A stretch of 64,000 bases of DNA from Pecten maximus (GCF_902652985.1 NC_047024.1:10478001-10542000), one strand, 5' to 3'. Positions 4,223-41,369 are shown, numbered from the stretch's first letter. The notes: generated by a model not told the origin, from the letters alone. Translations and numbers: made by a program.

Positions 4223-4287
4223 TTATTGAAATATGACTAGAATGTCCAAAATTACTTCAAATTCCAACCTGTCGATGCATCCATTTT
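4223..4287 (-). CDS. Terminal coding exon: (E)NGCIDRLEFEVILDILVIFQ*, completing the EF-hand
   Basis: Acceptor ttgtatttttcag|. Phase 1 joins exon 9281-9415 to give the 12-residue loop D-I-N-E-N-G-C-I-D-R-L-E (D1,N3,N5,G6,I8,D9,E12) followed by F. Stop TAA at 4225-4223. A minus-strand AATAAA lies at about 3137-3142. Confidence 0.88.
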
Positions 4288-6225
4288 CTGAAAAATACAA
4301 AATTTTACATTGTATTAATTTCATCAGTGGAACGTATAAGACGTATACGGAACGACAAATAAGTGACAATCAATCAGTATGTAGTGATAATTCTCTGATT
4401 TGTTTATATTAAGCGGTATAGCAATCTGGTTTCTAATGTAGGTATGCTGACGAAAACCAACGCAATTTCAAATTGAAGGTGATATTTAATAATTCTGTAT
4501 GAAATATCTAAGGTGTTTGCCGTTTACGACAAATATTCATAATACATCATCTTTGACGTCGTCTTGTAATGGCGTTACGCTTGGAAACTAAATAGCGACA
4601 GTAACTATGGACACCTTTTCTTTATTTCAGTCCGTTGTGGCCTAGTGCGATTTGCTAGCCAACCTTTTTAAATATATGAACTTTCTATCGTTTTACTTAA
4701 ATCCCAAGAGATTTCTTTATTGATATGTGTTTACGTTAGTTTGATAATTTGTGGTATTTCACTTCTAAAAGGTACTAGGGGGTATTTAATAGTTTCATAT
4801 AATATTTTATATTTCATGAACATTACAAAATAACGCTTTTTTGTTTTTTTTACATGACGGTGCAAAGTGAGTTTAGAAGACATAGCAGACCTGTATGTGT
4901 AAGTTTTTATCAGTATTTAGGTTTGTACAGCTATAGATAGCAAGTGCAACCAATGATCAATTAATTCAGATTAAATGTCCAACTTAGATCCAATGAAAGT
5001 TCGGGAAAAATCCAAATTTTCCACCTAGACACATAGTGATCGCAAATACCAAATGAAATGTGTGCGGACTCGCGGACTTGAAGCTTTTTGAAAACTTAAA
5101 GTGACTTTTGATGCAAAAAAGTTAAATCAAGTAGATAATAATAATAAATGATAATAATAAAGATAAATAAAAAATTGACATTATTTTACCCTAATAAACA
5201 TTGTAACTCCTAGATCTCTAATAGTTTAACCTAAAATAAAGTGTGTAGGGTGTGAAGTTGAGAACTTTTCAAAAACAAACAAACAAATAAAGGAAATACA
5301 AATTTTGGATGGGACGTCGACGTCGAAGAAACAATATTACAGTTGTAGCTTACGATTACTCGTTATCGGTGAACTAAAACTTTAGAAAAAAATATGTGTA
5401 CGTATTATAAACACACCCGACACAACTAAAGATGACACTTTAAATTATGCATGTTAGCAGCCAATTGTACATCATGGCAAGTAGAGTTTGGGGGCTAAAC
5501 TGGGCTATCAGCATTATCAACACCTTACAACAGACAGTTTAGAAATGTTCCAGTTATTTGACTTATGTTTGAGTAATAGAAGGGGTGTGTCTGAAGATGG
5601 AAAGCCTGGCTCTCGTTCGTACAGGGACGATTGTAATGGGCTCAGTATGTGATTCAATACTCGATGCATTATTATCTTAACCTAACAAAGTCGTGAAGTA
5701 AATTTAAAGCGGAGTATTGTCTTATACTCTAAAAAGACATTTCAGGATACTTGGTAAATAGTTTAGATACTGCACTCATACACAAGTGTTGGTGTTCTAT
5801 ACAAAGCTAGTAAAATTATAAAGTTAGTACACCTCCCTCCACTACTATTTTGGAACGTTTGTTTAGGTCGATTTTGATTTTTATCATTCGGATTCAACAT
5901 CTTAAAGCCCCTAGCAACGATATAGAGACCCATTCTGTTGATACCTCGGTTTGTAATGGATTTTGTCTCAGACATACGTAATAATCGAACGTTTGCTTGG
6001 TCAATTTCATTTTTTTCCCACCCGTATTCAACATCTTTATCATCTTTTCCCCCTAGCAACAATGCAGAGATGCAGTTATATTGATACCTCGACTTGTATG
6101 TAATGTATCTTTTTTTAAATACATACTTAACGATGTACTCCTGTATATTTAGTACATTGTGCTGATGGTATACCAATCTAAGATCGTGGAAATGTTGCTT
6201 CGTCAAGACACAAATACAAAATACT

Positions 6226-6645
6226 GTCGATAAAGTGTTAATAATCAATACACGGAGACAAACCCAGTCGATAAAGTGTTAATAATCAATACACAAAGAA
6301 ATCCCGTCGATAAAGTGTTAATAATCAATACACGGAGACAAACCCCGTCGATAAAGTGTTAATAATCAATACATGGAGACAAACCCCGTCGATAAAGTGT
6401 TAATAATCAATACACGGAGACAAACCCCGTCGATAAAGTGTTAATAATCAATACACGGAGACAAACCCAGTCGATAAAGTGTTAATAATCAATACACGGA
6501 GACAAACCCCGTCGATAAAGTGTTAATAATCAATACACGGAGACAAACCCCGTCGATAAAGTGTTAATAATCAATACACGGAGACAAACCCAGTCGATAG
6601 AGTGTTAATTATCAATACACGGAGACAAACCCCGTCGATAAAGTT
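6226..6645. repeat. 41-bp minisatellite, about 10 copies
   Basis: Unit gtcgataaagtgttaataatcaatacacggagacaaacccc. Confidence 0.95.
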
Positions 6646-7130
6646 TTCAACCATTGGTGCCGTTTTACTCTTTTGACTTAACAGTGTTTATTAGTCACGT
6701 GACATATCTTAAGTGTGGTTTACAGTGTACTAAACAGACAATGTAACTATCATTATTGTTTTGAAATCTAGACTACGTTCCGTCTGATTGTTGTTGAAGA
6801 AATGGAATACACATTTGAAATAGAAGCTAGTAAAAGATATTATTTTCTTTTTTTTTAATTAGTGACTTAATTACACCCATAGCCAGCTATTTAGAGCTAG
6901 ACGATGTTATCCTTAACGTAAATGCAAGATACAGAATATTAGTTTTTTTTTTTTTTTTTAGTTTTGATACACATCAAACAGTTGTTTTCCATATCATTTG
7001 GTGACAACTGTCTTTTCAAACAGATATATTTCACTTTCTTAACATAATTTCAAGAGTACAGGAGACTATGAAGACAATTAAATGCTTATATATAGTGTTT
7101 GCTTGACTGTAGATGTGTGGAGTCCGTCCA

Positions 7131-7221
7131 TAAGATATATGGTGATAATATCATCTAGATAAGATATATGGTGATAATATCATCTAGATAAGATATATGG
7201 TGATAATATCATCTAGATAAG
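7131..7221. repeat. 29-bp tandem repeat, 3 copies
   Basis: Unit taagatatatggtgataatatcatctaga. Confidence 0.95.
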
Positions 7222-9280
7222 CAGTTTACTGCATACAAAACAATCTTGAGGATTCGATTAACATCGCGGTTATTATCAACGCACCACTTTACATAGACTT
7301 AACGACCATTTGTGTCTGAAGGTATATTCTTATCATTAAATCGTGACCTATAAACTTTTAACAAGGTGTGGAATAAGCTCGTTACAATTTTTAATTATCA
7401 ACCAGGAAAAAGCTTCAAACGTTACTGAATTCTTTTTTCGACAGGACCAAAATGTTTCGAACGATAATGAACAGCTTGAATTTTGAGTGTATACTTCAAC
7501 TGGTAATAAAACTAATTTCGGGAGTCCTACAGTCCAATAGTAAATCGGAAGACTTCAATGCTGAAAATGGTAACAAAAATTCTATTTTACGATCCTAAAT
7601 ATGTTTCAAACGATAATTAATCGTATTTCGAGTGGACCTTAAATTCTTCATACAGTATTATGCTTCAAACGGTATCAAAATGAATTTCGGGATACTTATA
7701 AATATTTCAAACGTTAATTAAAGGTATTTCGGAAGAACGATAATAGTTTGTATTTCTGAAAATATATCAATACTTCTACCGGTAATGAAATGCGGTATAC
7801 CTCAAAATACTTCCAACGGAATTAATTGCTTTTTGGGAGGACCTAAATTGCTTCAAATGTTTTAAAATTTATTGCGAATGTTTTGCGTTTATAATGGATC
7901 TGTAACAGAATAATGATAAACACATAAGTATTGCAAAAACATATTAGTTATGGATAATACTTAAGCTATGGCGTAATTATTATCTTAATGTCACGTTTTA
8001 TGATATTAAATGCACTTAGACAGGTAAGTGATATTACTTACACTGGGTGTTTGTTTTGTGTTATTAACTACATAGAATGCATGCCGTATTGTATTTCCTT
8101 AATACACAATACCATTATCTACCGTTTTAGCTGCATGTTGTTTACATAGCGTCGATGTAAAAACTCGAGGGCATGTGATAAAGGCACATAATCGATGTGA
8201 TTATGAGGATACTGAAAGGCAATGATTCCATAAGATAAGCAATGCAGTTTGTGAATAGTTATAATCGTTTAAACAAAACTTGAATCCGAAAATTCAGCAT
8301 TCGATATTGTTTTTTTTTTTTTTTTTTACAGTACTTCTAACCACAGAAAGATTACGGTAAAGAAGGAAAGCCTTACTATCTCTCATTGCAATTACTTTTT
8401 ATCCAAGCTCAAATATTTGCTTTAAGTGGTATTATTGCGCAAGATGATTGGGACATTTATGAACGTAATTGTCGCTTCATGAATCGAACCTAAAACTTGG
8501 CTTAGAGACCACATGCATGATTATATCAATATTCTATCTTTTAATGAAGCTTAAGTGTCATTGTTAAGCAGGTTTAGTCTGTAGGTCTGGCGAGCATGCT
8601 AACGGCGTCCCATTAAGTTTCGGTTCTTCCGTTACACAAGGTGCGTACTAGGTATCTCAACCGAAACAATTGTACATAGAACTTTTATCTGGAAAATAAA
8701 TAAGCGCGTCTTACGCTTGTATTGCAATGGCTTATGTAGTTAGGTACAGGTTACAAACGCTAATTAATGAACGGAAACTGCTTGTTCGTTTAACAAATAC
8801 AAGATAGAGTAGTACGAAGTGTGCCGTGATGTGCAGTCCGACTTTTGCCTAATTGCATTGTTCTAAATATACCTTCGTTATACAGAGATGTGTTTTTTAA
8901 CAACTATGTAAGTCTGAAACTCCACAAACACACAGAACCCGCTTTTCAGAAGGCAGTCGGTGTATCCACGCCGTGTGGCTATCGCACTGATAGATCACGT
9001 CAGGTAAACATTCAAGGAAGACATGATAATATATTACTCATTAAAGCATTTATATCCTGAATATAAAGAAACATTAATTAATAAGGAATCATTTATAAAA
9101 TAATTAACGTAGTTATTATAAAATATACATTGAAACTAGGTATGTAAGAAACAGCATTAAATGGATTTATTAACGTGTAAAACGTATAACATATTATCCC
9201 ATTCTAGACTACCATTGAAACTCCGTACATCTGCGTACATTTGCATCTGTTGCCAGTGGCTGATGAATTACACCACTCAC

Positions 9281-9415
9281 CGTTAATATCAAATAAGTCA
9301 AACAGTCGTTCAAAAAAGGCTTCTTTACTTTCGTAAGAGGACGCATGTCTGCTAACAGAGTCCATAAATGTTCCATAAAATCCATTTCTCTTATTCCAGC
9401 GCATATCAGAGGACC
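9281..9415 (-). CDS. Coding exon 2: (G)SSDMRWNKRNGFYGTFMDSVSRHASSYESKEAFFERLFDLFDIN, with a KR site and the first helix and loop start of an EF-hand
   Basis: Acceptor tatttatctttttacag|, donor AACG|gtgagt. 135 nt, phase 1 at both ends. It is the real part of track ORF 9204..9461. FERLFDLFDIN fits an EF-hand E-helix and loop start. Confidence 0.88.
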
Positions 9416-9514
9416 CTGTAAAAAGATAAATACAATGCATAATAAATCTACATATTTGCAAATATATACAAGCATTACACGGATAGGTTCATTAGTGGGG
9501 GAAGAGGTTGTGAT

Positions 9515-10155
9515 AACCCTCCTGTGTGAGGACAATATATTGCGGCTGACCCTAGGATTCCCAACCCCTCCTTGGTAAGGACAATGGATGGTGGCTGATC
9601 CCAGAATTCCCAACCCCTCCTGGGTAAGGACAATGGATGGTGGCTGATCCTAGAATTCCCAACCCCTCCTGGGTAAGGACAATGGATGGTGGCTGATCCT
9701 AGAATTCCCAACCCCTCCTGGGTAAGGACAATGGATGGTGGCTGATCCTAGAATTCCCAACCCCTCCTGGGTAAGGACAATGGATGGTGGCTGATCCTAG
9801 AATTCCCAACCCCTCCTGGGTAAGGACAATGGATGGTGGCTGATCCCAGGATTCCCGACCCCTCCTGGGTAAGGACAATGGATGGTGGCTGATCCTAGAA
9901 TTCCCAACCCCTCCTGAGTAAGGAAAATGGATGGTGGCTGATCCTAGAATTCCCAACCCCTCCTGAGTAAGGACAATGGATGGTGGCTGATCCCAGGATT
10001 CCGCAACCCCTCCTGTGTGAGGACAATGGATGGTGGCTGATCCTAGAATTCCCAACCCCTCCTGGGTAAGGACAATGGATGGTGGCTGATCCAAGGATTC
10101 CGCAACCCCTCCTGAGTAAGGACAATGGATTGCGGCAGATCCCTGGATTCCCAAA
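9515..10155. repeat. 49-bp minisatellite, about 13 copies
   Basis: Unit aacccctcctgggtaaggacaatggatggtggctgatcctagaattccc. Starts about 100 bp from the exon 9415 acceptor. Confidence 0.95.
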
Positions 10156-10789
10156 CTCACACAGTCAATACAACGTTGTGGTGGGGAATAAAACATTTAA
10201 GATGTTTACAAAATGTGACTGGATTCAAAGATGGACAAAGAGCTTCAAGTACCTCGTGTAAGATGCCAAAGATACAATACTAAAACAAAATGGAACTATG
10301 CTTAAATTTGTTGTAAGCATGCGTAATTAAATTTACCTTTTTTTCAAACTTGGCATTAATCAAAGTAAGATTAAATATAGGGGTTTGTGTTTGGTTCACA
10401 TGACATAGTGAAGACGAGGAGACTGACATTGCGGCTGTTTACATTGCAATGGAATGTATAAAACATACCTAAAATATACGTTAATACGTGTATTGGTTGA
10501 TAGGAGACATTACCATATTAAATAAACATTTGGTTACATTTATTACTGAAGTATTTCGTAAATTCAGCCAGTATTAGTTATCTTTATACCTGTGTTTGAA
10601 CTTCTCTTCAATGTTTCAATTAACACACCAACCAGATGTATCAGGTTAGCTTGATCAGACGCTATACGATGATCAAACGGTTGTGGTCCTTTGTACGATA
10701 ACCTATCTCAGAGATTTGTGGTAAATAACGGAGCTTTCATCAATAGGATTTACTTGACCCTTCATGCTTCACATGGTACCTTAGATTGG

Positions 10790-13700
10790 AGGCGGGAGAC
10801 GATCGGGGGCGGGAGACACTTGGTGAGGTTAGCTAGGTCGGGGGCGGGAGACACTAAATGAGGTAACATAGATCGGGAGCGAAAGACACTTAATGAGGTA
10901 ACATAGATCGGAGGTGTGGGACACTTAATGAGGTAACATAGATCGGAGGTGTGGGACACTTAATGAGGTAACTTAGATCGGGGTCGGGGGACACTTAATG
11001 AGGTAACATAGATCGGGGTCGGGGGACACTTAATGAGGTAACATAGATCGGGGTCGGGGGACACTTAATGAGGTAACATGGATCGGGGTCGGGGACACTT
11101 AATGAGGTAACCTACATGTAGATCGGAGGCGGGAAATAATTAATGAGGTAACTTAGATCGGGGTCGGGGGACACTTAATGAAGTAACTTAGATCGGGGTC
11201 GGGGGACACTTAATGAGGTAACATAGATCGGGGTCGGGGGACACTTAATGAGGTAACATAGATCGGGGTCGGGGACACTTAATGAGGTAACATAGATAGG
11301 AGGTGTGGGACACTTAATGAGGTAAAATAGATCGGGGTCGGGGACACTTAATGAGGTAACATAGATTGGGGTCGGGGACACTTAATGAGGTAACATAGAT
11401 AGGAGGTGTGGGACACTTAATGAGGTAAAATAGATCGGGGTCGGGGGACACTTAATGAGGTAACATAGATCGGCGTCGGGGACACTTAATGAGGTAACAT
11501 AGATCGGGGTGTGGGACACTTAATGAGGTAACATAGATCGGGGTCGGGGGACACTTAATGAGGTAACATAGATCGGGGTCGGGGGACACTTAATGAGGTA
11601 ACATAGATCGGGGGCGAAAGACACTAAATGAGGTAACATAGATCGGGGTCGGGGGACACTTAATGAGGTAACATAAATCGTGGTCGGGGACACTTAATGA
11701 GGTAACCTACATGTAGATCGGGGGCGGGGGACACTTAATGAGGTAACTTAGATCGGGGTCGGGGGACACTTAATGAGGTAACATAGATCGGGGTCGGGGA
11801 CACTTAATGAGGTAACCTACATGTAGATCGGGGGCGGGGGACACTTAATGAGGTAACTTAGATCGGGGTCGGGGGACACTTAATGAGGTAACATAGATCG
11901 GGGTCGGGGGACACTTAATGAGGTAACATAGATCGGAGGTGTGGGACACTTAATGAGGTAACCTACATGTAGATCGGAGGCGGGAAATACTTAATGAGGT
12001 AACTTAGATCGGGGTCGGGGACACTTAATGAGGTAACATAGATCGGGGTCGGGGGACACTTAATGAGGTAACATAGATCGGAGGCGGGGGACACTTAATG
12101 AGGTAACATGGATCGGGGTCGGGGACACTTAATGAGGTAACCTACATGTAGATCGGGGGCGGGAGATACTTAATGAGGTAACTTAGATCGGGGTCGGGGG
12201 ACACTTAATGAGGTAACATAGATCGGCGTCGGGGACACTTAATGAGGTAACATAGATCGGGGTGTGGGACACTTAATGAGGTAACATAGATCGGGGTCGG
12301 GGGACACTTAATGAGGTAACATAGATCGGGGTCGGGGGACACTTAATGAGGTAACATAGATCGGGGTCGGGGGACACTTAATGAGGTAACATAGATCGGG
12401 GGCGAAAGACACTAAATGAGGTAACATAGATCGGGGTCGGGGGACACTTAATGAGGTAACATAAATCGTGGTCGGGGACACTTAATGAGGTAACCTACAT
12501 GTAGATCGGGGGCGGGGGACACTTAATGAGGTAACTTAGATCGGGGTCGGGGGACACTTAATGAGGTAACATAGATCGGGGTCGGGGACACTTAATGAGG
12601 TAACCTACATGTAGATCGGGGGCGGGGGACACTTAATGAGGTAACTTAGATCGGGGTCGGGGGACACTTAATGAGGTAACATAGATCGGGGTCGGGGGAC
12701 ACTTAATGAGGTAACATAGATCGGAGGTGTGGGACACTTAATGAGGTAACCTACATGTAGATCGGAGGCGGGAAATACTTAATGAGGTAACTTAGATCGG
12801 GGTCGGGGACACTTAATGAGGTAACATAGATCGGGGTCGGGGGACACTTAATGAGGTAACATAGATCGGAGGCGGGGGACACTTAATGAGGTAACATGGA
12901 TCGGGGTCGGGGACACTTAATGAGGTAACCTACATGTAGATCGGGGGCGGGAGATACTTAATGAGGTAACTTAGATCGGGGTCGGGGGACACTTAATGAG
13001 GTAACATAGATCGGGGTCGGGGGACACTTAATGAGATAACATGGATCGGGGTCGGGGACACCTAATGAGGTAACCTACATGTAGATCGGGGGCGGGAGAT
13101 ACTTAATGAGGTAACTTAGATCGGGGTCGGGGGACACTTAATGAGGTAACATAGATCGGGGTCGGGGGACACTTAATGAGGTAACATAGATCGGAGGCGG
13201 GGGACACTTAATGAGGTAACATGGATCGGGGTCGGGGACACTTAATGAGGTAACCTACATGTAGATCGGGGGCGGGAGATACTTAATGAGGTAACTTAGA
13301 TCGGGGTCGGGGGACACTTAATGAGGTAACATAGATCGGGGTCGCGGACACTTAATGAGGTAACTTAGATCGGGGTCGGGGGACACTTAATGAGGTAACT
13401 TAGATCGGGGTCGGGGGACACTTAATGAGGTAACTTAGATCGGGGTCGGGGACACTTAATGAGATAACTTAGATCGGGGTCGGGGACACTTAATGAGATA
13501 ACTTAGATCGGGGTCGGGGGACACTTAATGAGGTAACTTAGATCGGGGTCGGGGGACACTTAATGAGATAACTTAGATCGGGGTCGGGGACACTTAATGA
13601 GGTAACATAGATCGGGGTCGGGGACACTTAATGAGGTAACTTAGATCGGGGTCGGGGGACACTTAATGAGATAACTTAGATCGGGGTCGGGGACACTTAA

Positions 13701-14385
13701 TGAGATAACTCAGATCGGGGTCGGGGGACACTTAATGAGGTAACATAGATCGGGGTCGGGGGACACTTAATGAGGTAACTTAGATCGGGGTCGGGGGACA
13801 CTTAATGAGGTAACATAGATCGGGGTCGGGGTACACTTAATGAGGTAACTTAGATCGGGGTCGGGGGACACTTAATGAGGTAACATAGATCGGGGTCGGG
13901 GGACACTTAATGAGGTAACCTACATGTAGATCGGAGGCGGGAAATACTTAATGAGGTAACATAGATCGGAGGCGGGAGATACTTAATGAGGTAACTTAGA
14001 TCGGGGTCCGGGGACACTTAATGAGGTAACATAGATCGGGGTCGGGGGACACTTAATGAGATAACTTAGATCGGGGTCGGGGGACACTTAATGAGATAAC
14101 TTAGATCGGGGTCGGGGACACTTAATGAGATAACTTAGATCGGGGTCGGGGACACTTAATGAGATAACTTAGATCGGGGTCGGGGGACACTTAATGAGGT
14201 AACTTAGATCGGGGTTGGGGGACGCTTAATGAGGTAACATGGATCGGGGTCGGGGGACACTTAATGAGGTAACATATATCGGAGGTTGGGGACACTTAAT
14301 GAGGTAACATGGATCGGAGGTGTGGGACACTTAATGAGGTAACATGGATCGGGGTCGGGGGACACTTAATGAGGTACCCTGGACT
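10790..14385. repeat. G-rich 34-35-bp minisatellite (41-bp variants), about 100 copies
   Basis: Unit gacacttaatgaggtaacatagatcggggtcgggg. A variant carries cctacatgtag. Confidence 0.97.
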
Positions 14386-15555
14386 GGAGGTATTAACAAT
14401 ACAGAAAAACAGATTAAGTAAGAAACGTAGTCGTTTTTTCCTAAAGAAATGGTATTAGAGTTAGATGAATAACATTGTTTCCGCTATTTTAGTTGTGTGG
14501 TAATTTTGTTTTTCATCTATTGCCATCCGTAGGTTTAATTAGCCACAAATATTCCTCAACAGAAGTTTAACCACTTAATCTCCACACATCAACTGCATAA
14601 AATACACATTATCTTTTATACCGATTATAATGCGTTCCCGTAGCCATGTTAACGGAATTATGACATGAACATAATTGTGCTAATTCTACAAACATGACTA
14701 TAACGTAAGTTCCAACTATAAAATGTTACGTGGGTATGGGCGCTTTGGTGATTTACACGGTTAATTATCGTCCTTTCATTTGTACAACTATCAGGCTATT
14801 TCAGTAAATCAAATATTGGACAAAGAATAGAGAATGCCAGGGAACCTGCTGGTAAATGTCATGGGTTCTCCCGGAAGCTCAGATTAAATAGAATGACAAA
14901 GTTCAATGCATAGACTGTCGAGCCCTGTAAACACTTCGGCAAATTGACGATTCTCCATATCGATATTGTACATATCGTTTGATAGAAGTAAATATTGATA
15001 AGCAAAATTAGAAATATTTTTATCTTTAGGAAATCCAGATTGCTAATATTACACAAAATAAATAACAGTTAATATTGTGGTGAGATATAATACCTTTGTG
15101 TCTTTAAATAGAAAATATTTATAAAATCAAAGCCCAACAGATACCACGATGACTGTGATAACGGCCAAAGTAGGGATACATGTAACCAATGTGTGACCTG
15201 TCTGTCGTCCGCCTCCGGGTTATAAATTATCGATGACTTGGAGATTAGTGTGCGCCTGACTTAATGGATACAGACGAACATGTTAATCACAAAATTTAAT
15301 TATCATTTTATCTGTGCAGGTATTGCTGACAAGTGATATTTGTAATGTTTTAAATGGATATTTTACTATGAGGACTGCTTTGACCAATCCCATGCTTCCA
15401 AAACAACAAAATCAGTGGGATTAATCTGATTACAAATATCGTACTAGGTGGCTCCCTCTGGTGGGCAGCTACATTGTATGTGATAGCGCTACACAAGAAC
15501 TGTAATGTAGAAATCATACCACAGGTAGGTAGACGTCCACATGTAGGGAGAGTCA

Positions 15556-26677: not shown

Positions 26678-26706
26678 TTACATATCTGATTTACTGAGGT
26701 AGGAAT
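26678..26706 (-). CDS. Candidate alternative terminal exon: (D)SYLSKSDM*
   Basis: Strong acceptor ttgtttactttttttgtgccgcag|. Phase-1 reading gives 8 further codons and TAA. A minus-strand AATAAA lies at about 25748-25753. It is short and could be chance. Confidence 0.35.
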
Positions 26707-27189
26707 CTGCGGCACAAAAAAAGTAAACAATTTCAATGAACGCAATGGATGTTACTCCAGCTATGTTCAAATTAACCTAGCCAATCAGAATTACCGCATA
26801 TTTTTCATAGTTGATAGTATAATGAAATTATGTCAGAACTTATTTGCGCAGATATATCCTACACAGGCAAAATATCTTCATATCAATTTAGGCCAATTTC
26901 ATTTCATTTTCATGAACATTTCCAAGTCAAATTTTCCTCAAGACATTTTACCTGTGTTAAGCAACCAGAACAACACACAAATTACATCGAAGTCCATGAC
27001 AACACTTAAACTCTTACTAAACTACATGAAAAAAAATAAAAAATAAAAACGAACTGTCATTTTAAAGTTTGGTGATTTTATAGATTATTTGTAAACCATG
27101 CGTCTTCAAAGATTGTTTTTAAGTATGTAATTAAACCTTATTTCTAAGACATAGACACACCCTCATTTATTCGTAAATATGCTTTATTA

Positions 27190-27590
27190 CATTATTTACC
27201 AGTGAAATATCGCAAATTAATCATTATGTAAAAGTGATATTTTTTCATTTGTAAAAATATGTTACTTTTTCTGATCAGGCCAATCAAAACACTGTTTGCA
27301 AACGGCAACAGGAAAGATTAAAAGCTGACTCGGTATATTTTGCTATAAAATGTAATAAATATATAACAGGATCTTCATTAATAAAAATATATTTCACTCG
27401 TGTAGCTAATATTTGATATTAATGAAGACACTGTTAGATATCCTCTATACCATTTACATTGTATTTAGACACAACATGTGTACTTAAGTGAAATCTATAA
27501 TATGTACCCATTACATACGTTCTGTTTTCACTAGTGACAATATCACTTTTATAGAATGAATAATTTTCGATAATGCGCTGGTAAAACTAA
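27190..27590. mobile_element. Foldback/MITE-like remnant with nested inverted repeats
   Basis: 27192-27258 is an imperfect reverse complement of 27524-27590. Inner arms 27362-27392 and 27408-27440 (tcttcattaata / tattaatgaaga) form a second hairpin. Confidence 0.55.
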
Positions 27591-29939
27591 GAAATGTACA
27601 TTCTAAAATTGATATAGGTCACAGAATGTTCGAAACAAGCTGTTTGATATCAATGTATCTGTTACGTGAAGAGGAAGCGGGAAAACACTATCAAGAAATA
27701 GAAACTTCACCTTAGGGAATCACCACATTAATTATTAAATTGAGTAGCAGTTAAGATCCGGGTGCAACACTGATGTAGAAGATGTCCAAAATTATACGTC
27801 CCAATGATATAAGGTATATCACCGTACTTGTCAATAATGTTACAGAACATCTAAAGACAGCACGCTATCGATATATCCAAAAGTGAAATTGAAAGGATTG
27901 ATAACAACTTTGCTACATGTAGCTGTTCTTCAATACATCCTGTCTCGTAGGAAAAACCAAATAGGCCAATAGGAAGACACAGGCTGCCCATGGGTATATA
28001 CGCTAACTGTTCGTAAAGTCACGAAAAGCAATGCGGAGGTTACGTCAAAGGAATCACTCTCCAAATTATATCATAAACGTATTTATATTGGTATCAATTT
28101 TCACAAACTATTCTCAGAAGAAAAGAACAGGGAAGTAGTTTAATGTGAGAACTATGTCTAATATTTTTAAACGATACAGCAGTATAAATAGGTGTGCTTT
28201 TATTGAACGACTAAAGCCTTCCGTCAAGCTAGAGCATGCGATATTGCATACTATTAAATGCTAATGATATTTTATATTGAGGTTTCTAAATTTTCAAACG
28301 TCTGATATATTTAAGATATGTTAGTTTCAGTAGACATTTTGCCAATCCTGCCATATGTGCCACGTAGATAAATCTATACCTCAAAGTTCATTCTGTATTC
28401 ACCCCAGTGATTGCAATTTCCAAATCAAACGCTACCTCGTAAGCATTGCGTAAAATAATTGAATTCATAATGTAATTTCTTAACTTCCGTTTCCTTAGTT
28501 ACAAAACAAAGATTTCCCATGTCAGGCCTGTTTTTGTTCGCTGACAAAACAGTATATCCCCATGTCACTGCAAGATTAATCACCAAAACATTCAAAACCG
28601 GATGCTGCAGTGTAGCGGGAATAGACATGACAGGAAATACCATCTCGCAGATTAACACTTCACTATCGATATTGTGTGACCCTGACCTTCGTTTCCTCAA
28701 GAGGCATGATGGTAAAAATGCTCTAATAAACTGATAGTATATGTGGCATTCATTGAAGTCAGTAATTGTTAATATTATTAAACACCAAGCGTTAATAATG
28801 AAAACGTTGTCTATGAAACTATTTTGTCCAAGGTAACGAAGCGCACGAAGGGTTCTAATTATGCACGGTAACAACAGCCGATCAAACAAAAGAAAGATTT
28901 ACCATGGTTTTATGAACACGCGAGAGCATAATTCTATTTTCGTTAAAAAATTATACAAGTATATGTCAAAGCTCTTAAACGACAAACAAAAAGGGAAATT
29001 AAGCTTCTGCTTCATCGACGAGGTCTGCGACGTATTTCTATGTCAAATCAAAGTCATGGAACATTCCTAAAAGTATGAACAGCTTGGTGAAGGCAGCGCT
29101 TTAAATACCAGCATATAATGAGCACGTTCAAGTGTACATTTCACATGGAAAGATATTTCCAATGAGAGCATGACTTGCTCATAGGTTTTATCAATGGGTA
29201 CAAGCGGAAACCTTGTGTCACACCCATCAGTAGACGAACTATATAAAACTCTTTATGATATCTGAAGATCCGGCACATCTGTACGAATCTTAACAAGTTA
29301 GCACCATAGGTTTGGGAATTCAGGAGTGCTTCTATCATACAACAGCAACATAGACTATTGACTCTATACTTATATTTGTTTAACTCGGTAATCTCTTCTG
29401 TCTCTGTCCTCCGTTCATGTTGGTCACACTATTCGCGCGTATGTTTTATGTTTCAATCCTAAAGTAAACAATGGCTTTCATTATAATCATTGTCCAAAAT
29501 TGGTTCAAAGTACATCATTGTATTTGACACAAGTTGTAGCAACTGATGAAGCCTTTTCATTTCAAGAGAACATTTAGCATATATGCACATTAACATATAT
29601 CATTTTCTTTACCAAAGAGTAACCGATTTTAACATACCTGCACGAGCATTTAAATAAAATTGTTTCTAAAAAAATAGATGATAAGCATTTTGAAAATGGT
29701 GTCCACAAGAAAACAATGAGGTACTCTGCAAATGTAGAGTTGTTGAGAAAGGTATACACAATATGTGATATCAGTACAGTTAAAGACAATACGCCAGAAA
29801 TATGAGAAATTTAAATTTAAATAATTGATAAATTCATCATTTTGCAAGTGATGTAGCTATTACTTAATTAATAATTAATATATAAAGGTGTTAATGACTT
29901 GGTTGCGTTTTGTAATACGTTCTGAACACTCGTTCACCC

Positions 29940-30565
29940 CAAGCCTTTTGTAAACTCATTTTATACACTCCGTTTGTACATTCCTTTTGTAAACTCCTTT
30001 TGTAAACGCTTTTATACACTTCCTTTGTACACTTATCTTATACATTCCTTTTGTATAAGCCTTTTGTACAGTTAAACCTTTTGTAAAGGTATAAGTATAT
30101 TTTTTTAGCTTGTTTTCCAATCTTACATGTATATATGACTTGTACTGTGATGTTAGTATTTACAATTTTTATATTATTTGAACTAAACCTTTCGTACACG
30201 TCATTTGTAAACACATTTTGTACTCTCCTTTTTTTACATTCCTTTTGTGCACGCCTTTTTACACGCTTATTGTAAAAGCCTTTTGTACACGGGTTTTTAC
30301 ACGTCTTTTGTACACCTTTTTGTAAACGCCTTTTGACATTCCTTTTGTATATGCCTTTGTACATTCGTTTTGTCTAGTCCTTTTGTACACCCATTTTTAC
30401 GCGCCATTTGTACATTCCTTTTGTACACTCCTTTTGTACACGCCTTTTGTACACGCCTTTTGTACACTCCTTTTGTATACTCCTCTTGTACACGCCTTTT
30501 GTACACGTCTTTTGTATACTCATTTTGTACACGCCGTTTGTACATTCCTTTTGTACATCCCTTTT
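29940..30565. repeat. Degenerate 14-15-bp repeat (cttttgtacacgc), with an interruption
   Basis: Many ttttgtacac/ttttgtaaac cores, with a unique AT-rich stretch at about 30090-30185. Confidence 0.88.
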
Positions 30566-33500
30566 TCAAAGCATTGCCATTTGCCTTGATAACAAAACTT
30601 CAAAACCGCCATCAAATGCGACAAAGCTTGTGTCCACGAGACTACTTCAATACGTTTTCAAATTCGGATCAAATCATATTCACGATCTCACAATTTGTTG
30701 TACGGTAATAAAGGTGTCATATTCTACCTTTCCAATGCGATCCAGTAACATTTGTGGTTTATGTTTTAATAAACAAAACATAACAGTTGAAGTTTAGTAT
30801 TAATAAGAAAAGGTAAACAATTTAAGTTTACCTACAAATATGCAAATCAATTAAGTTTACCTATTAATAAAACAATGGTAAACAGTTTAAATTTGCATAT
30901 TAATAAACAAAGATAAACAATTTATGTTTACCTATCAATAAAGAATAATCAACAGTTTAAGCTTATCTATTAATTAAGCATTTAGAATTTTTACAGGAAA
31001 CCATTTACAATAATCGAGCATCTTTATACGGTGATCGTCTCACTGAGCATAATTAAGCAATTTAATCTAGTGAACTTTTTGATTTTAAATTATACAAAAT
31101 CTATCAACTAGAATTATGTTTATACATTAAATTGTGACAAGAATTTTGGAGTACGCACTGAACTACTATTCTTATAATCAAATTGTTCTAAATTACAGTA
31201 TATTTCTGTGTTTGTATTGTATGCATTGTTTAAATAGATATTTAACTTTAAATTGCTAATAGGATATTTAATCGAATAATAATAAAATAGCACTTTTAGT
31301 TTAACGCTACATGGCATGGCAATTTATTTCCCCTGTACGTCGTGTGTGCTGCACCCAACAGTATACCATCGAAAGTTGATGTTTATTACCGAAGACCTCC
31401 GCTGACAGCAAGCCGGAAAATGCAAGTTTATTAATAGTTTAACAGTGTTAAAACCGCATTAATGTTCATTCTGAATTTTCTACGTCTTTTGATTTAAAAC
31501 TTACAAGATACGGTTCGGATAATGTATTTTGTTAAGAATGCACCATTCACTCAATCTAAACATGGTAAAAACTAACCAGTCTTACTACATCTCAGGACTA
31601 CGTGGGAGATAACGTGGTTATACAAACATTTCTCCATGTCAATTACAATTCTAACCATGGCGTGGGAGGCTGCGGGAGGCCCATTGGAATCGTATAACCA
31701 TTTTCTCAGACACCTCAACGCCGCGTCCACATGGATAATACATGAGAGAGAGCATTTCGCACCTACAGCAAACACTTAAAGGTCCGTGTCCTCATCCTTT
31801 GGAAGCTTTGAATATTGTTAATGTCACAGTTCAGCTGCTTCTATCAGCGTATAAAGAGTCATTGTGTTAATATATAAACAATGCACCCAACTTGCAAGCA
31901 TATGGCAATGTCCTCCAGCAGCAGTAAATGCAATACCATGCGTGGCGATTAACGATACAAATACGGACGTGGTTACTATAACAATACTTTTATGTCATTT
32001 GTAGTAATGACCTTTAACAATTTCAATTTTGAATCAATCTTGCTTTTACGAACCCAGTGGAAAAAATTCAGATTTCGATCATATTACGGAACTTCAGTAA
32101 CACTATTGTTAAGAATAATTAGAAACCATGATATATTATGTGAACGTTTTATGGCGAAAGACTGATGGAGTATTATTTTTAATTGTTGCTATTGTCTCAA
32201 AAATCAGATATGTTACCATTGATTGTGGAAGACATCTTGGTAATGCGGCAATCTGATCAAAACTGGTTAATATGACCTACAATATGTTTCGCTAAAAGTA
32301 TGCATATTAAAAATATGACACAATCAAATCATGATGTAGGGAATATCACAATGAACTGTTATCAGCCTTAACTGACAATATATATTTTATTAACACCGTT
32401 AAAATATACATAGTATACATGTTATAGCATGTATCTAAGACAGTGGATCCATGGCGATATCTCGTATTACTTTGTATCCTGTTGACGAAGTTAAGGACCA
32501 ACTGGAGGGGTTAATTAAAAACCAAAATGCCTTTATAAATGAACATCATTAAGGTCCTTAGGAAGGGGAGCGGTTTATTGCAATCTCGCTAGGGGGTAGG
32601 CGATACCTAACAGACCCCTTCTGTAATACCGGTACCGATAATTCTACAGGGTTGCATGCATAGGTCAAACATATGACATTCACCAACTCTTAGGAGTTAA
32701 TGTTAAGTCCAAATTACTTGCCTCATTCCTACCGTGTCTCTGACACTTAACCTTACGGAATATATTTGCATTAAAACCAACATTAACGGCGATTCAGTAA
32801 GAATTAACTTTCATGTATTTGTTTCTGTATGACATTCCTCATTAAGGTCAGCTGATTGTCATTGAGAGTGACTTTATTACGGTTCGTGGGTGTACCTATC
32901 CCAGGTATATAGCAATAAATGTCCTAGTTAGAACACGTTTTTGAAGTCACTGGTTATTTTTGCAATGACAATATCTACATGTTGTAATAAGGAATTATCA
33001 CATTAAACAAATGTATATTAGTTGGGTACCTAAACGTCAATTATTGAAAAGTATTACTAGCTCGTTACACCTTAACATATTATGTGTATGCGTTACTAAC
33101 ACGCATTAACACACCCGTTTACTGAAATAAAGGGTGTCGTATTTTCATGGCTATCACAAACAACACTCGACGAACGACAATAAAGACTACCTTCGGTAAT
33201 TTCCGTCATGATTTCAATTTAACCTCACGTCGTGATTAGTTACCGGTGACACAGATTTTACGACGGAGCTACAGTTTCTGATCAGAAAGCTCTCACGTGT
33301 AACAATTCTCGCTTACAACATTTTGGGTTGATAGGATTGTACAACAGAAATATAAATTCTACCAAACTTTGTTTTATGGTTTATATAGACAACGTGCGTT
33401 GGTATTAAAGCTTCCGTCGACACAATTCACCCCAATTTCACTTCTATAGACACAGGCAGGGTATATGCTGACAATTAATTGAGTACTAGAGTGTAATCTG

Positions 33501-34271
33501 TGTGCTCCGTAATTAGTGAATTTACCTCTACGTCTGTTCTGTTAAAAAGCTTATTCATAGGGTGACGTCACTCACTGTCTGAGCGTTTAAACTGTTTGAC
33601 CGATAGGGGAGGAGGCGTATTTTTTGGCTTCTGATCAAAATATTTCCTTTTGTAGTACAAGAAAATTGGACATAAAACATGGAATTCTTCGATTAATCGG
33701 CAACACATTCTGTTTTCATATATATGAATGAATTTTTGTTGAATGAAAATTGCGAATGCCAAATGGATATTAAAATTTTACGAACAAGCCGTTATACTCT
33801 CGAATGCTTTGCCCTATCTTACATGTAACATAGCAGCGTATTAATAAGCTACTTTACATATTGAATACTTAAAACAAATACATGTTTTAATCATTTTGAA
33901 AATAAGTCTCAGTCATGTTCGAAATTCATGGACATGACGTGATGTGTTTTGTCTATTTTCAATGTCCTATGAAATACTCTCTTACCTGTTTACTCATATC
34001 AATAGTATTTTTTTTTAATCAATCATTTTGTGACAAGAGTAATATTTTACCATTTGAAGTTATTGATAGATGTCGTACAGCCGGTTTTACTAGAATTTCA
34101 CGCATCGCTGTGTGTCTTCACTATGTTACGTTAAACAATCAAAACAGTACAGTTATAATGGTTCAGTATCCTCCAGCCGGGGATAGCATCAGGAGGAGAG
34201 TTGTAACCACGCCACTTCGGGTGTTATCAAACAATCACACCAATATGAAAAACGTAACAATTGTTTAAACA

Positions 34272-34525
34272 AATAGACGATTTACTAGGTATAGATCGAA
34301 CATATCTTGTGATTGTGTATGACCATATGGGTGAATAGACGATTTACTAGGTATAGATCGAACATATCTTGTGATTGTGTATGACCATATGGGTGAATAG
34401 ACGATTTACTAGGTATAGATCGAACATATCTTGTGATTGTGTATGACCATATGGGTGAATAGACGATTTACAAGGTCAAACATATCTAGATCTCGTGATT
34501 GTGTATGACCATATGGGTGAATACA
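34272..34525. repeat. 62-bp tandem repeat, 4 copies
   Basis: Unit aatagacgatttactaggtatagatcgaacatatcttgtgattgtgtatgaccatatgggtg. Confidence 0.95.
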
Positions 34526-36204
34526 CTTCTCCTGAATGGTACGGAAACTGTACAAGTGACAGTGTCCACGATCATCTGCTTACAAACAAAGCAGTATTGG
34601 TTTTAAAATGAAGTTTAATATGAAACACAAATCTTTGAAATGCGGTTAGTTGTCGGAGCAAAATGTGGCAAGATCGCGATAGGAAATTAAAATAAACTCT
34701 AATAAAATGAATGCACATATACCTCCACAGCAAATTTGGATTCCTTTGATACACTGCAAAGCTGGAAGGAATTGTGTTTACGAACTCTCGAAATGAACTC
34801 CGGCATTACAGGCATTTACATGTGGAATGCGGACGGGCCGTGTATTTAATGTAATAATTTCACGGGTTTATCAAAGCGTGGTATTGTATGGTGTACCAGC
34901 TCAGAGACTTCACGAACATGTATCATAGAGGAAAAACTCAAATACCACATGTCTTCATTCTGTTAAATGAATTATTTGTAAATATCTATTTTAGATCATC
35001 AATATACATGCAGTCCATAAAACGTTAATTAAGAAATATTTCCTTTTCCATAATAGTAACATGGCAGAGTTTAAGGAAACAACATTTAAAAATCTGGCCT
35101 ATCTCCAAATTCACGAAAAAAAAATTGTGTTGATTTTAGATATCATTTTCAATTTTCATAAGTATACCAATACTGTAAATTCGCCTTGTAAATACGAATG
35201 TACAATGTAGATTTTCAGTATTATTTTCAAATTTATCCTCCGCTAAAAGTGAAAACATTCCGAGTACGCGGTATCAATTGTGCAACTCTAAACAGCTGCT
35301 TACAAAAAACGTATATTATTTCTGATTAATAAAACAAATATTGATAAGTCTTTTTGCTTAAGACCACTTCTTCTTATTAAATATCTATATGTTTTCTTTG
35401 TTCGTGAAGCTGATGAGATACAATCACGCCTGTTAAGCCGAAAGTAATGTTCCGAGAACATATCGAATATTATGGTCACAATAAAAGAAGTGTCCACGCC
35501 GACAGACACAGAATACGTCATTATGCCAATACGAATCTAACGAAAGCATGTCTAAATATGAATCGTCTTTCTTTTTTCACTTCCTCTGTCACTTTAAAAA
35601 GCTTAGTCTAGACATATACAGCAATATATTGAAAATTGTACCAAACAAACAAGGATATAGAAATGAATTTATCTGACAATAAAAAAAAACAAAAAAAAAA
35701 AAAAAACAGTACAATCTGTATGGGTATGTCTACGTTTCTGATTTACAACAGACCGAAGATCGGCGTAGTGTACAGATGTTCTCATTGTCGGTACATGTAC
35801 GTATATCACTGATTGTAAAAGGATGCACAAATCATCGCACATTATATAAATGTTAGTGTTCCCGTATGAATTCTGTATATCTGAAAGCAGAATTATGCAC
35901 TTCCCCTCATCGTCTGTCTGCCAAATTACGAAAATAGCCTTGTTTTCCTAAGTATCCAAAGTTTCAAGTTAAAATGTACACTACTACAGAATACAAATTT
36001 TAAAAGTATAAAGTATTAGCTGTAATGTAATAATTACAGAAAATCGTCTAGCTCTGTAAGTCTAGGATTGATTTTTTTTATCTAAGCATCCTAGAACGAG
36101 CATTTTCCCAAAGAGGAATATCCGTATCGTTAGACAAATGCCTCGCCAATTATCTCGCAAAGTGAACAATACAAGATTAATGTCAAAGAATCACAATAAC
36201 TTAC

Positions 36205-36358
36205 CGTGAAATCGAGAGCGTAGTGCCGCTATGTCGAGTTCCCGGCGAGGTCCCGATGTTTTCAACCGAGGAATGTAAAACCCCGAGGTAATTCCGAATT
36301 GTCCGACGATTAGTGTTAGAAGCAGACAACACCAATAAAGTAGTCCACACTGTTGCAT
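36205..36358 (-). CDS. Coding exon 1 of a putative secreted prepropeptide (signal peptide plus start of peptide region): MQQCGLLYWCCLLLTLIVGQFGITSG-FYIPRLKTSGPRRELDIAALRSRFH
   Basis: Acceptor ctactttcattttcttgtag| precedes exon start 36360, followed by AT ATG. There are 51 open codons with a hydrophobic core LLYWCCLLLTLIVG and a small-residue cleavage region (ITSG). Consensus donor CACG|gtaagt, phase 1. Too short for the ORF track. Confidence 0.8.
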
Positions 36359-41200: not shown

Positions 41201-41369
41201 TCAACAGTTAGGGGGATACAGCATAGCAGATATTCTCTAGCGTCCTCTCCCCGCAGGTAATGGAATGCAGTATGCCAGATATTGTTCAACGTCCTCTCCC
41301 AATAGGTAATTGAATAATAAAGCAGGACAGATATTGTCTAACATCCGCTCATCACAGGTAAAATGTATT

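What the first reader, a model, noticed from the sequence alone, without database searches (positions are those of the whole stretch)
4223..36358. Hidden 117-aa secreted precursor: signal peptide, dibasic-flanked peptide and C-terminal EF-hand
Seen: three small minus-strand exons with consensus splice sites and matching phase 1 junctions give MQQCGLLYWCCLLLTLIVGQFGITSGFYIPRLKTSGPRRELDIAALRSRFHGSSDMRWNKRNGFYGTFMDSVSRHASSYESKEAFFERLFDLFDINENGCIDRLEFEVILDILVIFQ. The EF-hand loop only forms across the last junction, which strongly supports that splice. Known: RR/KR are prohormone-convertase sites, and a signal/peptide/EF-hand-propeptide layout is described for mussel mytimycins, whose mature peptide is Cys-rich, unlike this one. 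Inference: processing would release FYIPRLKTSGP and ELDIAALRSRFHGSSDMRWN plus a Ca-binding C-peptide. That suggests a neuropeptide or defence-peptide family I cannot match to any named one. The 27-kb exon1-exon2 join is the weakest link, and further exons may intervene.
Basis: partly seen in the sequence, partly recalled or inferred. Interest (0 to 1): 0.85.

Follow-up and report, generated by a model that had tools for sequence, protein, structure and literature searches.

The report
Conserved bivalve secreted EF-hand precursor gene
The three small exons form a real gene, apparently unannotated in the king scallop, for a 117-residue secreted protein with a conserved Lys-Arg site and one calcium-binding EF-hand; it belongs to an uncharacterised family found across bivalves that is laid out like allatotropin-type neuropeptide precursors.

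Summary
Three minus-strand exons (36358-36205, 9415-9281, 4287-4223) have consensus splice sites and matching phase-1 junctions.

- **Orthologues:** proteins from two other scallops (Mizuhopecten OWF41716.1, 117 aa; Argopecten XP_069132017.1) tile exactly onto the three exons at 96-97% identity. No coding exon is missing and the C-terminus is the same.
- **Family:** it is present in oysters, unionids, venerids and myids, always named "uncharacterized". I found it in none of four mollusc/spiralian neuropeptide catalogues. No Pecten maximus entry turned up.
- **Conserved parts:** a 21-26 aa signal peptide, a hexapeptide motif directly after it, a basic cluster, W-x-K-R, and a C-terminal EF-hand with all calcium ligands.
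- **Relation to allatotropin:** the layout is not unique, because allatotropin and gastropod pleurin/HCS2 precursors also end in an EF-hand. The scallop's own allatotropin gene lies elsewhere and shows no detectable sequence similarity. The shared intron inside the EF-hand loop also occurs in calmodulin-like genes, so it does not prove kinship.

Best reading: a prohormone-like secretory protein cut at KR. Processing and function are inferred, and no RNA data could be obtained.

The parts
36205..36358 (-). Coding exon 1: Met1 to the first base of Gly52 (signal peptide, N-terminal peptide, RR, start of spacer). The donor is G|GTAAGT.
   Evidence: tblastn of P0001 residues 1-52 gives 98% identity, E 2e-32.
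36281..36358 (-). Predicted signal peptide, residues 1-26, with cleavage after T-S-G.
   Evidence: Hydrophobic core KD 2.5; small residues at -1 and -3. The equivalent site in all 12 family members directly precedes the conserved motif. No SignalP run was available.
36248..36280 (-). N-terminal peptide FYIPRLKTSGP (residues 27-37). Its first six residues carry the family motif [FLYM][YF]x[PR]x[ML].
   Evidence: Y28 and P30 are near-invariant. The motif segment has pair identity 0.56.
36242..36247 (-). Arg38-Arg39, a candidate convertase site.
   Evidence: Present in scallops. Other bivalves have RK, RR or RxxR clusters nearby that do not align strictly.
9416..36204 (-). Intron 1, 26,789 bp, phase 1. 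About 37% of it is tandem-repeat arrays.
   Evidence: The intron position is conserved in oysters, shown by read-through fragments P0044-P0049.
9281..9415 (-). Coding exon 2: rest of Gly52 to the first base of Glu97 (end of spacer, W-N-K-R, helix, E-helix and the first three loop residues).
   Evidence: P0001 matches at 91% and E 2e-26.
9387..9392 (-). Lys60-Arg61, the conserved dibasic site preceded by Trp58.
   Evidence: W58, K60 and R61 are invariant in A1/A2 and at least 90% conserved in A3.
4288..9280 (-). Intron 2, 4,993 bp, phase 1, inside codon 4 of the EF-hand loop.
   Evidence: Oyster and other fragments P0045 and P0012 have the same position. So do the scallop allatotropin gene and calmodulin-like genes.
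4223..4287 (-). Coding exon 3: rest of the EF-hand loop, the exiting helix, a hydrophobic tail and the TAA stop (4225-4223).
   Evidence: It is identical to the P0001/P0033 C-termini. All family members end 10-15 residues after loop position 12.
9281..9290 (-). EF-hand loop positions 1-3 (D-I-N) plus the first base of position 4.
   Evidence: loop columns.
4262..4287 (-). EF-hand loop positions 4-12 (E-N-G-C-I-D-R-L-E).
   Evidence: Ligand positions 1, 3, 5, 9 and 12 and hydrophobic position 8 are kept in all members.
36361..36362 (-). AG of a pyrimidine-rich acceptor two bases before the ATG. This is possibly the end of a 5'UTR intron; the upstream exon was not found.
   Evidence: The Argopecten RefSeq model has a non-conserved 23-aa N-terminal extension. 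This is inference only.
3920..3925 (-). First ATTAAA after the stop (about 298 nt downstream), a candidate poly(A) signal.
   Evidence: Pattern match only.

Best explanation
This is a genuine single-copy three-exon gene of Pecten maximus. It encodes a 117-aa protein that enters the secretory pathway through a 26-aa signal peptide. It belongs to an unnamed family of 110-130-aa proteins found across Bivalvia, and the family shares one layout:

- a signal peptide;
- a short peptide that starts with a conserved aromatic-Tyr-x-Pro-x-Met/Leu motif;
- a basic cluster;
- a variable, disordered spacer;
- an almost invariant W-x-K-R;
- a folded C-terminal piece of about 56 aa, made of one helix plus one canonical calcium-binding EF-hand.

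The most likely working is that of a prohormone. A PC1/3- or PC2-type convertase would cut after KR (and after RR in scallops). That would release a calcium-binding C-terminal polypeptide and a short N-terminal peptide, in the way that allatotropin and gastropod pleurin/HCS2 precursors carry an EF-hand tail behind their peptides.

Shown here: the gene model, its conservation, the signal-peptide features, the retained EF-hand ligands and the conserved KR. Inferred: cleavage, secretion, calcium binding and any signalling role.
For: **Gene model**
- Splice sites and phases are as described.
- Orthologues tile exactly onto the three exons.

**Constraint**
- The protein is 96% identical to Mizuhopecten and 97% to Argopecten.
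- The scallop allatotropin precursor is only 88-89% identical between the same genera.

**Family breadth**
- Members occur in Crassostrea, Saccostrea, Potamilus, Mercenaria, Ruditapes, Mya, Dreissena and Mactra.
- Full-length uninterrupted ORFs sit on 1-2 kb assembled contigs in relatives (P0002, P0004, P0011). That implies spliced mRNA, because both intron positions are also seen as read-through fragments.

**Conservation by segment**
- Pair identity is 0.65 for W-x-K-R, 0.58 for the loop, 0.56 for the N-terminal motif and 0.23 for the spacer.
- Signal-peptide features are present in all members.

**EF-hand**
- Pfam EF-hand_6 scores E 9e-5.
- The family profile hits GCAP/NCS EF-hands in the PDB at E 2e-10.
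- D1, N/D3, D/N5, I/V8, D/E9 and E12 are all kept.

**Structure model**
- The AF2 model of the Mya member has a disordered spacer. The modelled helices begin just before W-x-K-R and run on into helix-loop-helix, with pLDDT 63-76.

**Precedent for the layout**
- The scallop allatotropin precursor has the same layout.
- Anopheles allatotropin carries the InterPro EF-hand site.
- Biomphalaria pleurin ends in an EF-hand.
Against:
- No family member has a Gly-dibasic amidation signal or repeated peptides, which are the usual hallmarks of neuropeptide precursors.
- The low-confidence AF2 model of the scallop protein (pLDDT 55) puts W58 in a beta-bridge with loop position 8. If that were real, W-x-K-R would belong to a degenerate partner EF-hand and would not be a cleavage site.
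- The net charge of the C-terminal piece is not conserved: -7 in scallops and +2 to +5 in heterodonts.
- Pfam scores for the single EF-hand fall just below the gathering cut-off in the scallop protein (22.3 against 25 bits).
- A lone EF-hand normally needs a partner, and the homodimer test gave no answer.
Confidence: 0.55

Rival explanations
1. It is an uncleaved small secreted or ER/Golgi-lumen calcium-binding protein. Residues of about 43-117 would form one lobe, a degenerate EF-hand paired with the canonical one, and W-x-K-R would be structural. It would act as a calcium buffer, sensor or cargo helper, like MCFD2-type luminal EF-hand proteins.
For: The scallop AF2 model shows helix 43-50, a 12-residue stretch and helix 63-76, with a bridge between W58 and I101. 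Exon 2 has about the size and end point of the calmodulin-like exon that carries EF-hand 1 plus the start of loop 2. Atlas lists MCFD2 clusters at 0.76-0.77. There is no amidation signal.
Against: That model is low confidence, and the Mya model leaves the whole spacer disordered. The spacer varies in length by more than 12 residues and is poorly conserved. An invariant Lys-Arg has no role in EF-hand loops. The MCFD2 scores are below the tool's lead threshold.
Confidence: 0.28
2. It is an old duplicate of the allatotropin gene. It would have lost the amidated allatotropin peptide but kept the signal peptide, a KR site and the EF-hand tail.
For: The overall plan and size match (113 against 117 aa), and the EF-hand loop sits at residues 95-106 against 94-105. 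Both genes have three coding exons and a phase-1 intron in loop codon 4. Atlas gives allatotropin clusters at 0.92-0.93 with 170 shared features for the scallop protein.
Against: BLASTP finds no alignment. hhalign gives 3.4% probability, over the loop only. The Atlas link is not reproduced with the Mya member. Intron 1 differs in phase and place. The loop intron is shared with many calmodulin-like genes in this genome, so it is not diagnostic. The family's EF-hand scores best against NCS/GCAP-type hands.
Confidence: 0.2
3. It is a relative of pleurin/HCS2. It would be a bivalve copy that kept the EF-hand tail seen in gastropod pleurin while its PRX-amide peptide decayed.
For: By eye only, against the Biomphalaria pleurin precursor. 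There is a peptide starting with an aromatic-Tyr motif directly after the signal peptide, ending in PRL in scallops. A W-N-(D)-K-R lies before the last peptide. The precursor ends in a single EF-hand followed by a short tail. Pleurin peptides lie directly after the signal peptide.
Against: hhalign against the scallop's own pleurin precursor gives 0.2%. That precursor's coding sequence reads as one ORF with no EF-hand. Pleurin genes are reported to have a single intron (PMC8557429). Arg in the motif is not conserved outside scallops, and there is no Gly for amidation.
Confidence: 0.1
4. It is a defence-peptide precursor of the mytimycin kind, with a cationic N-terminal peptide and an EF-hand pro-region.
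For: The layout is signal, peptide, dibasic site, EF-hand. In scallops the N-terminal part is +6 and the C-terminal part is -7.
Against: The mature part has one Cys or none, against 12 in mytimycins. It has one EF-hand against two. The charge pattern is not conserved in heterodonts. The gene is single-copy, unlike expanded AMP families.
Confidence: 0.04
5. It is a chance assembly of open frames, or a dead gene.
For: There are no transcripts from this species, and no P. maximus protein entry was found.
Against: Orthologues tile exactly across three genera. Both intron positions are conserved in oysters. Calcium ligands are intact and there are no stops.
Confidence: 0.02

Closest known systems
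Allatotropin precursor (scallop Py-allatotropin MH045204; P. maximus 'allatotropins-like', P0034)
   Same: Both are small (113 aa) secretory precursors with a Cys-containing signal peptide, a KR site and a C-terminal single EF-hand at almost the same residue numbers. Both genes have three coding exons and a phase-1 intron in codon 4 of the EF-hand loop.
   Different: This protein has no G-F-R...G-F-Gly-Lys-Arg amidated peptide, and no sequence similarity is detectable. Its KR lies in exon 2 rather than exon 1, and intron 1 is phase 1 rather than phase 2. The real allatotropin gene is on another chromosome (G000:C19).
Pleurin / HCS2 precursor of gastropods (Helix HCS2, Bogdanov 1998; Biomphalaria pleurin in PMC5455113)
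   Same: [quoted passage not shown]
   Different: Pleurins give several PRX-amide peptides with Gly-dibasic ends, and this family has none. Scallop pleurin lies elsewhere, lacks an EF-hand and is not similar by profile.
Mytimycin precursors (Mytilida antifungal peptides)
   Same: Both have a signal peptide, then a peptide, then a dibasic site, then an EF-hand-containing C-terminal extension.
   Different: Mytimycins have a 12-Cys mature peptide and two EF-hands in the extension. This family has one Cys or none and one EF-hand. No member of this family was found in Mytilida.
Neuronal calcium sensor / GCAP EF-hand 2 and calmodulin-like EF-hands
   Same: These are the best sequence matches for the EF-hand (E 2e-10). 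Calmodulin-like genes of this genome share the loop-codon-4 phase-1 intron.
   Different: Those are cytosolic proteins with four EF-hands and no signal peptide or dibasic sites.
MCFD2 (luminal two-EF-hand cargo-receptor partner)
   Same: Both are small proteins with a signal peptide, a disordered N-terminal part and a C-terminal EF-hand region (Atlas 0.76-0.77).
   Different: MCFD2 has two canonical EF-hands and no conserved KR. The score is below the level the tool treats as more than a lead.

Membership tests
EF-hand (Pfam PF13405 / PF00036) | A 12-residue loop with oxygen ligands at positions 1, 3, 5, 9 and 12, Gly at 6 and a hydrophobic residue at 8, flanked by helices. | tested here: met
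   The loop D-I-N-E-N-G-C-I-D-R-L-E is canonical. D1 and E12 are invariant, and positions 3, 5, 8 and 9 are conservatively kept in 12 members. Gly6 is replaced by R, K, N or Q in heterodonts. Pfam gives E 9e-5, at 22.3 bits against a 25-bit cut-off. The PDB profile search gives E 2e-10. Helices are predicted on both sides.
EF-hand (Pfam PF13405 / PF00036) | Calcium is actually bound. | not testable with these tools
   This needs a binding assay on the C-terminal piece.
Allatotropin precursor | An allatotropin peptide (G-F-basic ... G-F/Y followed by Gly and a dibasic site) between cleavage sites. | tested here: not met
   After KR the sequence runs into the EF-hand domain with no Gly-dibasic site in any member. 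The true peptide is encoded at G000:C19.
Allatotropin precursor | Detectable sequence homology to allatotropin precursors. | tested here: not met
   BLASTP finds none. hhalign gives 3.4%. Atlas gave 0.93 for the scallop protein but nothing for the Mya member.
Allatotropin precursor | A C-terminal single EF-hand, split by a phase-1 intron in loop codon 4. | tested here: met
   The same intron occurs in calmodulin-like genes, so the feature is not specific.
Pleurin / HCS2 | One or more PRX-amide peptides (P-R-[ILVMF]-Gly-dibasic), the first directly after the signal peptide. | tested here: not met
   The position right after the signal peptide is matched. No Gly follows, and Arg is present only in scallops.
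Pleurin / HCS2 | Profile similarity to pleurin precursors. | tested here: inconclusive
   Against the scallop pleurin the probability is 0.2%.
Mytimycin | A Cys-rich (12 Cys) mature peptide followed by a tail with an EF-hand pair. | tested here: not met
   The mature part has one Cys or none and a single EF-hand, against two in mytimycins.
Regulated-pathway prohormone (generic) | An N-terminal cleavable signal peptide. | tested here: met
   By rule-based check only: a 21-26 aa leader, hydrophobic core KD 1.7-2.5, and G/S at -1 with T/S/V at -3 in all members.
Regulated-pathway prohormone (generic) | Conserved dibasic convertase sites that bound conserved products. | tested here: met
   KR is near-invariant, and a basic cluster follows the N-terminal peptide in most lineages.
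Regulated-pathway prohormone (generic) | Processed peptides detected, and neuroendocrine expression. | not testable with these tools
The protein is absent from the scallop ganglion catalogue and its MS tables.

The most novel reading that the evidence does not exclude
The family is a so far uncatalogued bivalve peptide-hormone precursor. The conserved N-terminal peptide, which begins with aromatic-Tyr-x-Pro-x-Met/Leu right after the signal peptide, would be a new non-amidated signalling peptide. The EF-hand C-peptide, cut off at W-x-K-R, would be either a second secreted product or a calcium-dependent sorting or aggregation module for dense-core granules. Such a module may be shared by descent with the EF-hand tails of allatotropin and gastropod pleurin precursors.
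Probability: 0.3. Interest if true: 0.65.

Novelty: new variant of a known kind. Interest (0 to 1): 0.45.

Why it matters
If the reading holds, bivalves carry a conserved secretory precursor that is missing from the four neuropeptide catalogues I could search. These were the scallop, oyster, pan-mollusc and spiralian sets.

It would also be a third independent example, after allatotropin and pleurin/HCS2, of a peptide precursor that ends in a calcium-binding EF-hand. The role of that tail has never been explained. A family in which the tail is the best-conserved part and no amidated peptide competes for attention would be a clean system for asking what it does. Candidate roles are calcium-dependent sorting, granule condensation, or a secreted calcium-binding factor.

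On the practical side, this is a gene that appears to be missing from the P. maximus annotation. The cause is probably a 27-kb satellite-rich intron between two tiny exons.

It is not a categorically new kind of molecule. Orthologues are already in the public databases as unnamed proteins.

Tried and rejected

**The joined model.** Exons were searched by reference. The natural Mizuhopecten orthologue P0001 (5 differences) stood in for whole-protein analyses.

- Short peptides copied from the supplement of PMC5996578 were accepted.

**Searches that gave nothing useful.**
- Pfam on single exons found nothing.
- AF2 models were low confidence (mean pLDDT 55-56).
- Foldseek against the PDB gave nothing.
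- The complex prediction homodimer of residues 62-117 returned no answer, which is evidence neither way.

**Ideas tested and dropped.**
- Exon 3 might splice onward from an internal GT. Rejected, because all orthologues end at the same stop.
- The loop intron might prove allatotropin kinship. Rejected after I found the same intron in calmodulin-like genes.
- The Atlas allatotropin hit was not reproduced with a divergent family member.
- P0003 is a Nucella repeat protein that scored E 5e-22. It is a sum of ten weak repeats of about 9 bits each, not a relative.

**Other checks.**
- The family was found in none of four neuropeptide catalogues, as far as their supplements are held as text. LOC105318014 and KP79_PYT02132 appear in no paper.
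- The search of earlier findings returned nothing.
- There are no tRNAs or Rfam matches in the window, and other long ORFs are repeat-derived.

Full report
**What is in the sequence.** On the minus strand there are three short coding exons.
- Exon 1 starts at the ATG at 36358 and ends with G at 36205, followed by GTAAGT.
- Exon 2 runs 9415-9281, between TTTTTACAG and GTGAGT.
- Exon 3 starts at 4287 after TTTTTCAG and reaches TAA at 4225-4223.

Both junctions are phase 1. Introns are 26,789 and 4,993 bp. About 37% of intron 1 is made of ten tandem-repeat arrays. The window's only run of N (57794-57893) lies outside the gene and was left alone.

I never submitted the joined P. maximus protein to any tool.
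- The open frame around exon 2, scored over the exon alone, found one protein: Mizuhopecten yessoensis OWF41716.1. It is a 117-aa "hypothetical protein" with 91% identity over the exon.
- Its cluster also holds Argopecten irradians XP_069132017.1.
- tblastn of both proteins against the window gives three significant hits only, and these are the three exons. They cover residues 1-52, 50-100 and 96-117 with nothing left over.

So no coding exon is hidden in the 27-kb intron, and the stop in exon 3 is the real end. My initial suspicion was that exon 3 splices onward from an internal GT to a second EF-hand. That is rejected, because every family member ends 10-15 residues after the loop.

Overall identity is 96% to Mizuhopecten and 97% to Argopecten. 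The allatotropin precursor of the same species pair is only 88-89% identical, so this protein is at least as constrained as a proven neuropeptide precursor. Each exon is single-copy in the genome.

The genome is Pecten maximus. A locus in it is 100% identical to a RefSeq protein named for that species.

No P. maximus protein of this family appeared in either database search, although P. maximus RefSeq proteins are in that database. The gene therefore seems to be unannotated here.

**The family.** An exhaustive phmmer search with the Mizuhopecten protein and a profile search recovered members from:
- oysters (C. gigas LOC105318014, C. angulata, Saccostrea);
- a unionid (Potamilus);
- venerids (Mercenaria, Ruditapes, Mactra);
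- myids (Mya, Dreissena);
- unnamed transcript-like contigs.

All are named hypothetical, uncharacterized or "EF-hand domain-containing". I found nothing outside bivalves, but the searches could not prove absence.

Oyster fragments that read through into introns show that both introns sit at the same codons and phase as in the scallop. Full ORFs on 1-2 kb contigs imply spliced mRNA in relatives.

**Anatomy and conservation.**
- In all 12 aligned members a 21-26-residue hydrophobic leader ends in a small residue at -1 and at -3.
- The next six residues form a conserved motif: FYIPRL in scallops, LYLPEM or LYLPNM in most others. Tyr28 and Pro30 are near-invariant.
- A basic cluster follows after 5-10 residues. 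It is RR in scallops and RK, RR or RxxR elsewhere.
- Then comes a spacer that varies by more than 12 residues in length.
- Then comes a near-invariant W-x-K-R.
- Last is a C-terminal piece of 54-59 residues.

Mean pairwise identity by segment:

| Segment | Pair identity |
|---|---|
| W-x-K-R | 0.65 |
| EF-hand loop | 0.58 |
| N-terminal motif | 0.56 |
| Flanking helices | 0.50-0.53 |
| Spacer | 0.23 |

The EF-hand loop keeps D1, N/D3, D/N5, I/V8, D/E9 and E12 in every member. Gly6 is replaced in heterodonts. Pfam sees EF-hand_6 at E 9e-5, just under its cut-off. The family profile matches GCAP and neuronal-calcium-sensor EF-hands in the PDB at E 2e-10.

AF2 models are weak. In the better one (the Mya member) the spacer is disordered. 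Helices 65-87, 91-102 and 112-122 form the C-terminal piece at pLDDT 63-76, starting right at W-x-K-R. The scallop model (pLDDT 55) instead hints at a short helix and a bridge between Trp58 and loop position 8.

**How it probably works.** The signal peptide sends the protein into the secretory pathway. A Lys-Arg that is conserved across more than ten genera sits where a disordered linker meets a folded domain. That is the usual signature of a convertase site in the regulated pathway.

Cleavage there would free a calcium-binding piece of about 56 residues. Cleavage at the upstream basic cluster would free a peptide of 11-16 residues carrying the conserved motif. All of this is inference. There is no amidation signal, no repeated peptide and no expression or peptide data.

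The main rival is that the protein stays whole, with W-x-K-R being part of a degenerate partner EF-hand. A lone EF-hand needs a partner. The homodimer prediction gave no answer, which counts neither way.

A defence-peptide reading is unlikely, for three reasons: the mature part has one Cys or none, the charge pattern is not conserved, and the gene is single-copy.

**Comparison with what is known.** The layout of signal, peptide, dibasic site and EF-hand is not new.
- *Allatotropin.* The scallop precursor printed in the supplement of PMC5996578 ends in a canonical EF-hand. Anopheles allatotropin is listed with the InterPro EF-hand site (PMC9387463).
[quoted passage not shown] HCS2 is the pleurin precursor (PMC8398477). 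The Biomphalaria pleurin precursor shows that tail.
- *Mytimycin.* These precursors carry two EF-hands behind a 12-Cys peptide.

I located the scallop's own allatotropin gene on another chromosome. It has three coding exons, and its EF-hand loop is split in codon 4, phase 1, exactly as here.

That looked like strong evidence of kinship until I checked calmodulin-like genes of the same genome. Dozens of EF-hand-pair matches stop at the same profile position. All five that I inspected have the same phase-1 intron. So the intron says only that the EF-hand is of the calmodulin type.

Sequence gives no support for allatotropin kinship:
- BLASTP finds nothing.
- hhalign gives 3.4%.
- The Atlas allatotropin hit for the scallop protein (0.93) did not recur with the Mya member.

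The scallop pleurin coding sequence reads as one ORF with no EF-hand, and it is not similar by profile.

The family therefore fails the defining tests of all three named families while working on the same plan. It is absent from four neuropeptide catalogues, as far as their supplements are held as text: scallop, oyster, pan-mollusc and spiralian.

**Verdict.** This is a prohormone-like secreted EF-hand protein of an unnamed bivalve-wide family.

I rate it a new variant of a known kind, of moderate interest. The interesting part is the unexplained EF-hand tail, which is here the best-conserved part of the precursor.

Noticed in passing
window 9517-34523 (intron 1): Ten separate tandem-repeat arrays fill about 37% of the 26.8-kb intron. 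Examples are a 35-bp unit x101 at 10801-14376 (G-rich, GC skew +0.4), a 19-bp unit x103 at 15557-17449 and a 17-bp unit x102 at 21186-22919. The long multi-frame ORFs in the window are translations of these arrays.
   Followed up: partly
window 40202-42279, 46297-48509, 51627-53341, 58237-59848: Upstream of the gene there are further long satellite arrays with 54-, 39-, 20/47-, 31- and 49-bp units, plus a 26-nt poly-C at 42297-42322. No other protein-coding gene, tRNA or Rfam family was detected in the 64 kb.
   Followed up: partly
window 57794-57893: A run of 100 N (assembly gap or mask), outside the gene. It was left untouched.
   Followed up: no
L003:1456-1686 (-) and L004:850-1594 (-) = G000:C19 about 5.132-5.147 Mb: This is the P. 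maximus allatotropin gene. Exon 1 holds the signal peptide, the peptide and the start of the spacer (phase-2 donor). About 14 kb further on lie exon 2 and exon 3, which split the EF-hand loop in codon 4, phase 1. A pyrimidine-rich acceptor sits 11 nt before the ATG, as in the gene studied here (2 nt).
   Followed up: yes
G000:C3 about 6.6-7.4 Mb (also C16 about 9.09-9.15 and 31.44-31.51 Mb): There is a large tandem cluster of calmodulin-like EF-hand genes, with dozens of PF13499 matches. Many exons end at profile position 52-56. Five were inspected (one from the C3 cluster, one on C16, two on C18 and one on an unplaced contig), and all have a phase-1 intron in codon 4 of the second EF-hand loop.
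   Followed up: partly
L006:1498-1857 (-) = G000:C2 about 53.207 Mb: This is the P. maximus pleurin precursor: a 119-aa ORF with a signal peptide, then a peptide ending in FPRI-Gly-Lys-Arg. It has no EF-hand, unlike gastropod pleurin/HCS2.
   Followed up: partly
P0033 (Argopecten XP_069132017.1); also P0038, P0040 and P0043: Several RefSeq models of the family start at an upstream in-frame Met and add 23-36 non-conserved residues before the conserved Met and signal peptide. The P. maximus sequence upstream of the ATG is unrelated and has stops further up. These extensions look like translated 5'UTR.
   Followed up: partly
P0003 / P0056 (Nucella lapillus KAL8586503.1, KAL8586504.1): These are gastropod 'proteins' of 560 and 4398 aa made of near-identical repeats of about 55 aa. 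Each repeat weakly resembles residues 24-49 of the scallop protein. The strong E-value is the sum of ten chance-level matches, and the proteins are probably translated satellite.
   Followed up: partly
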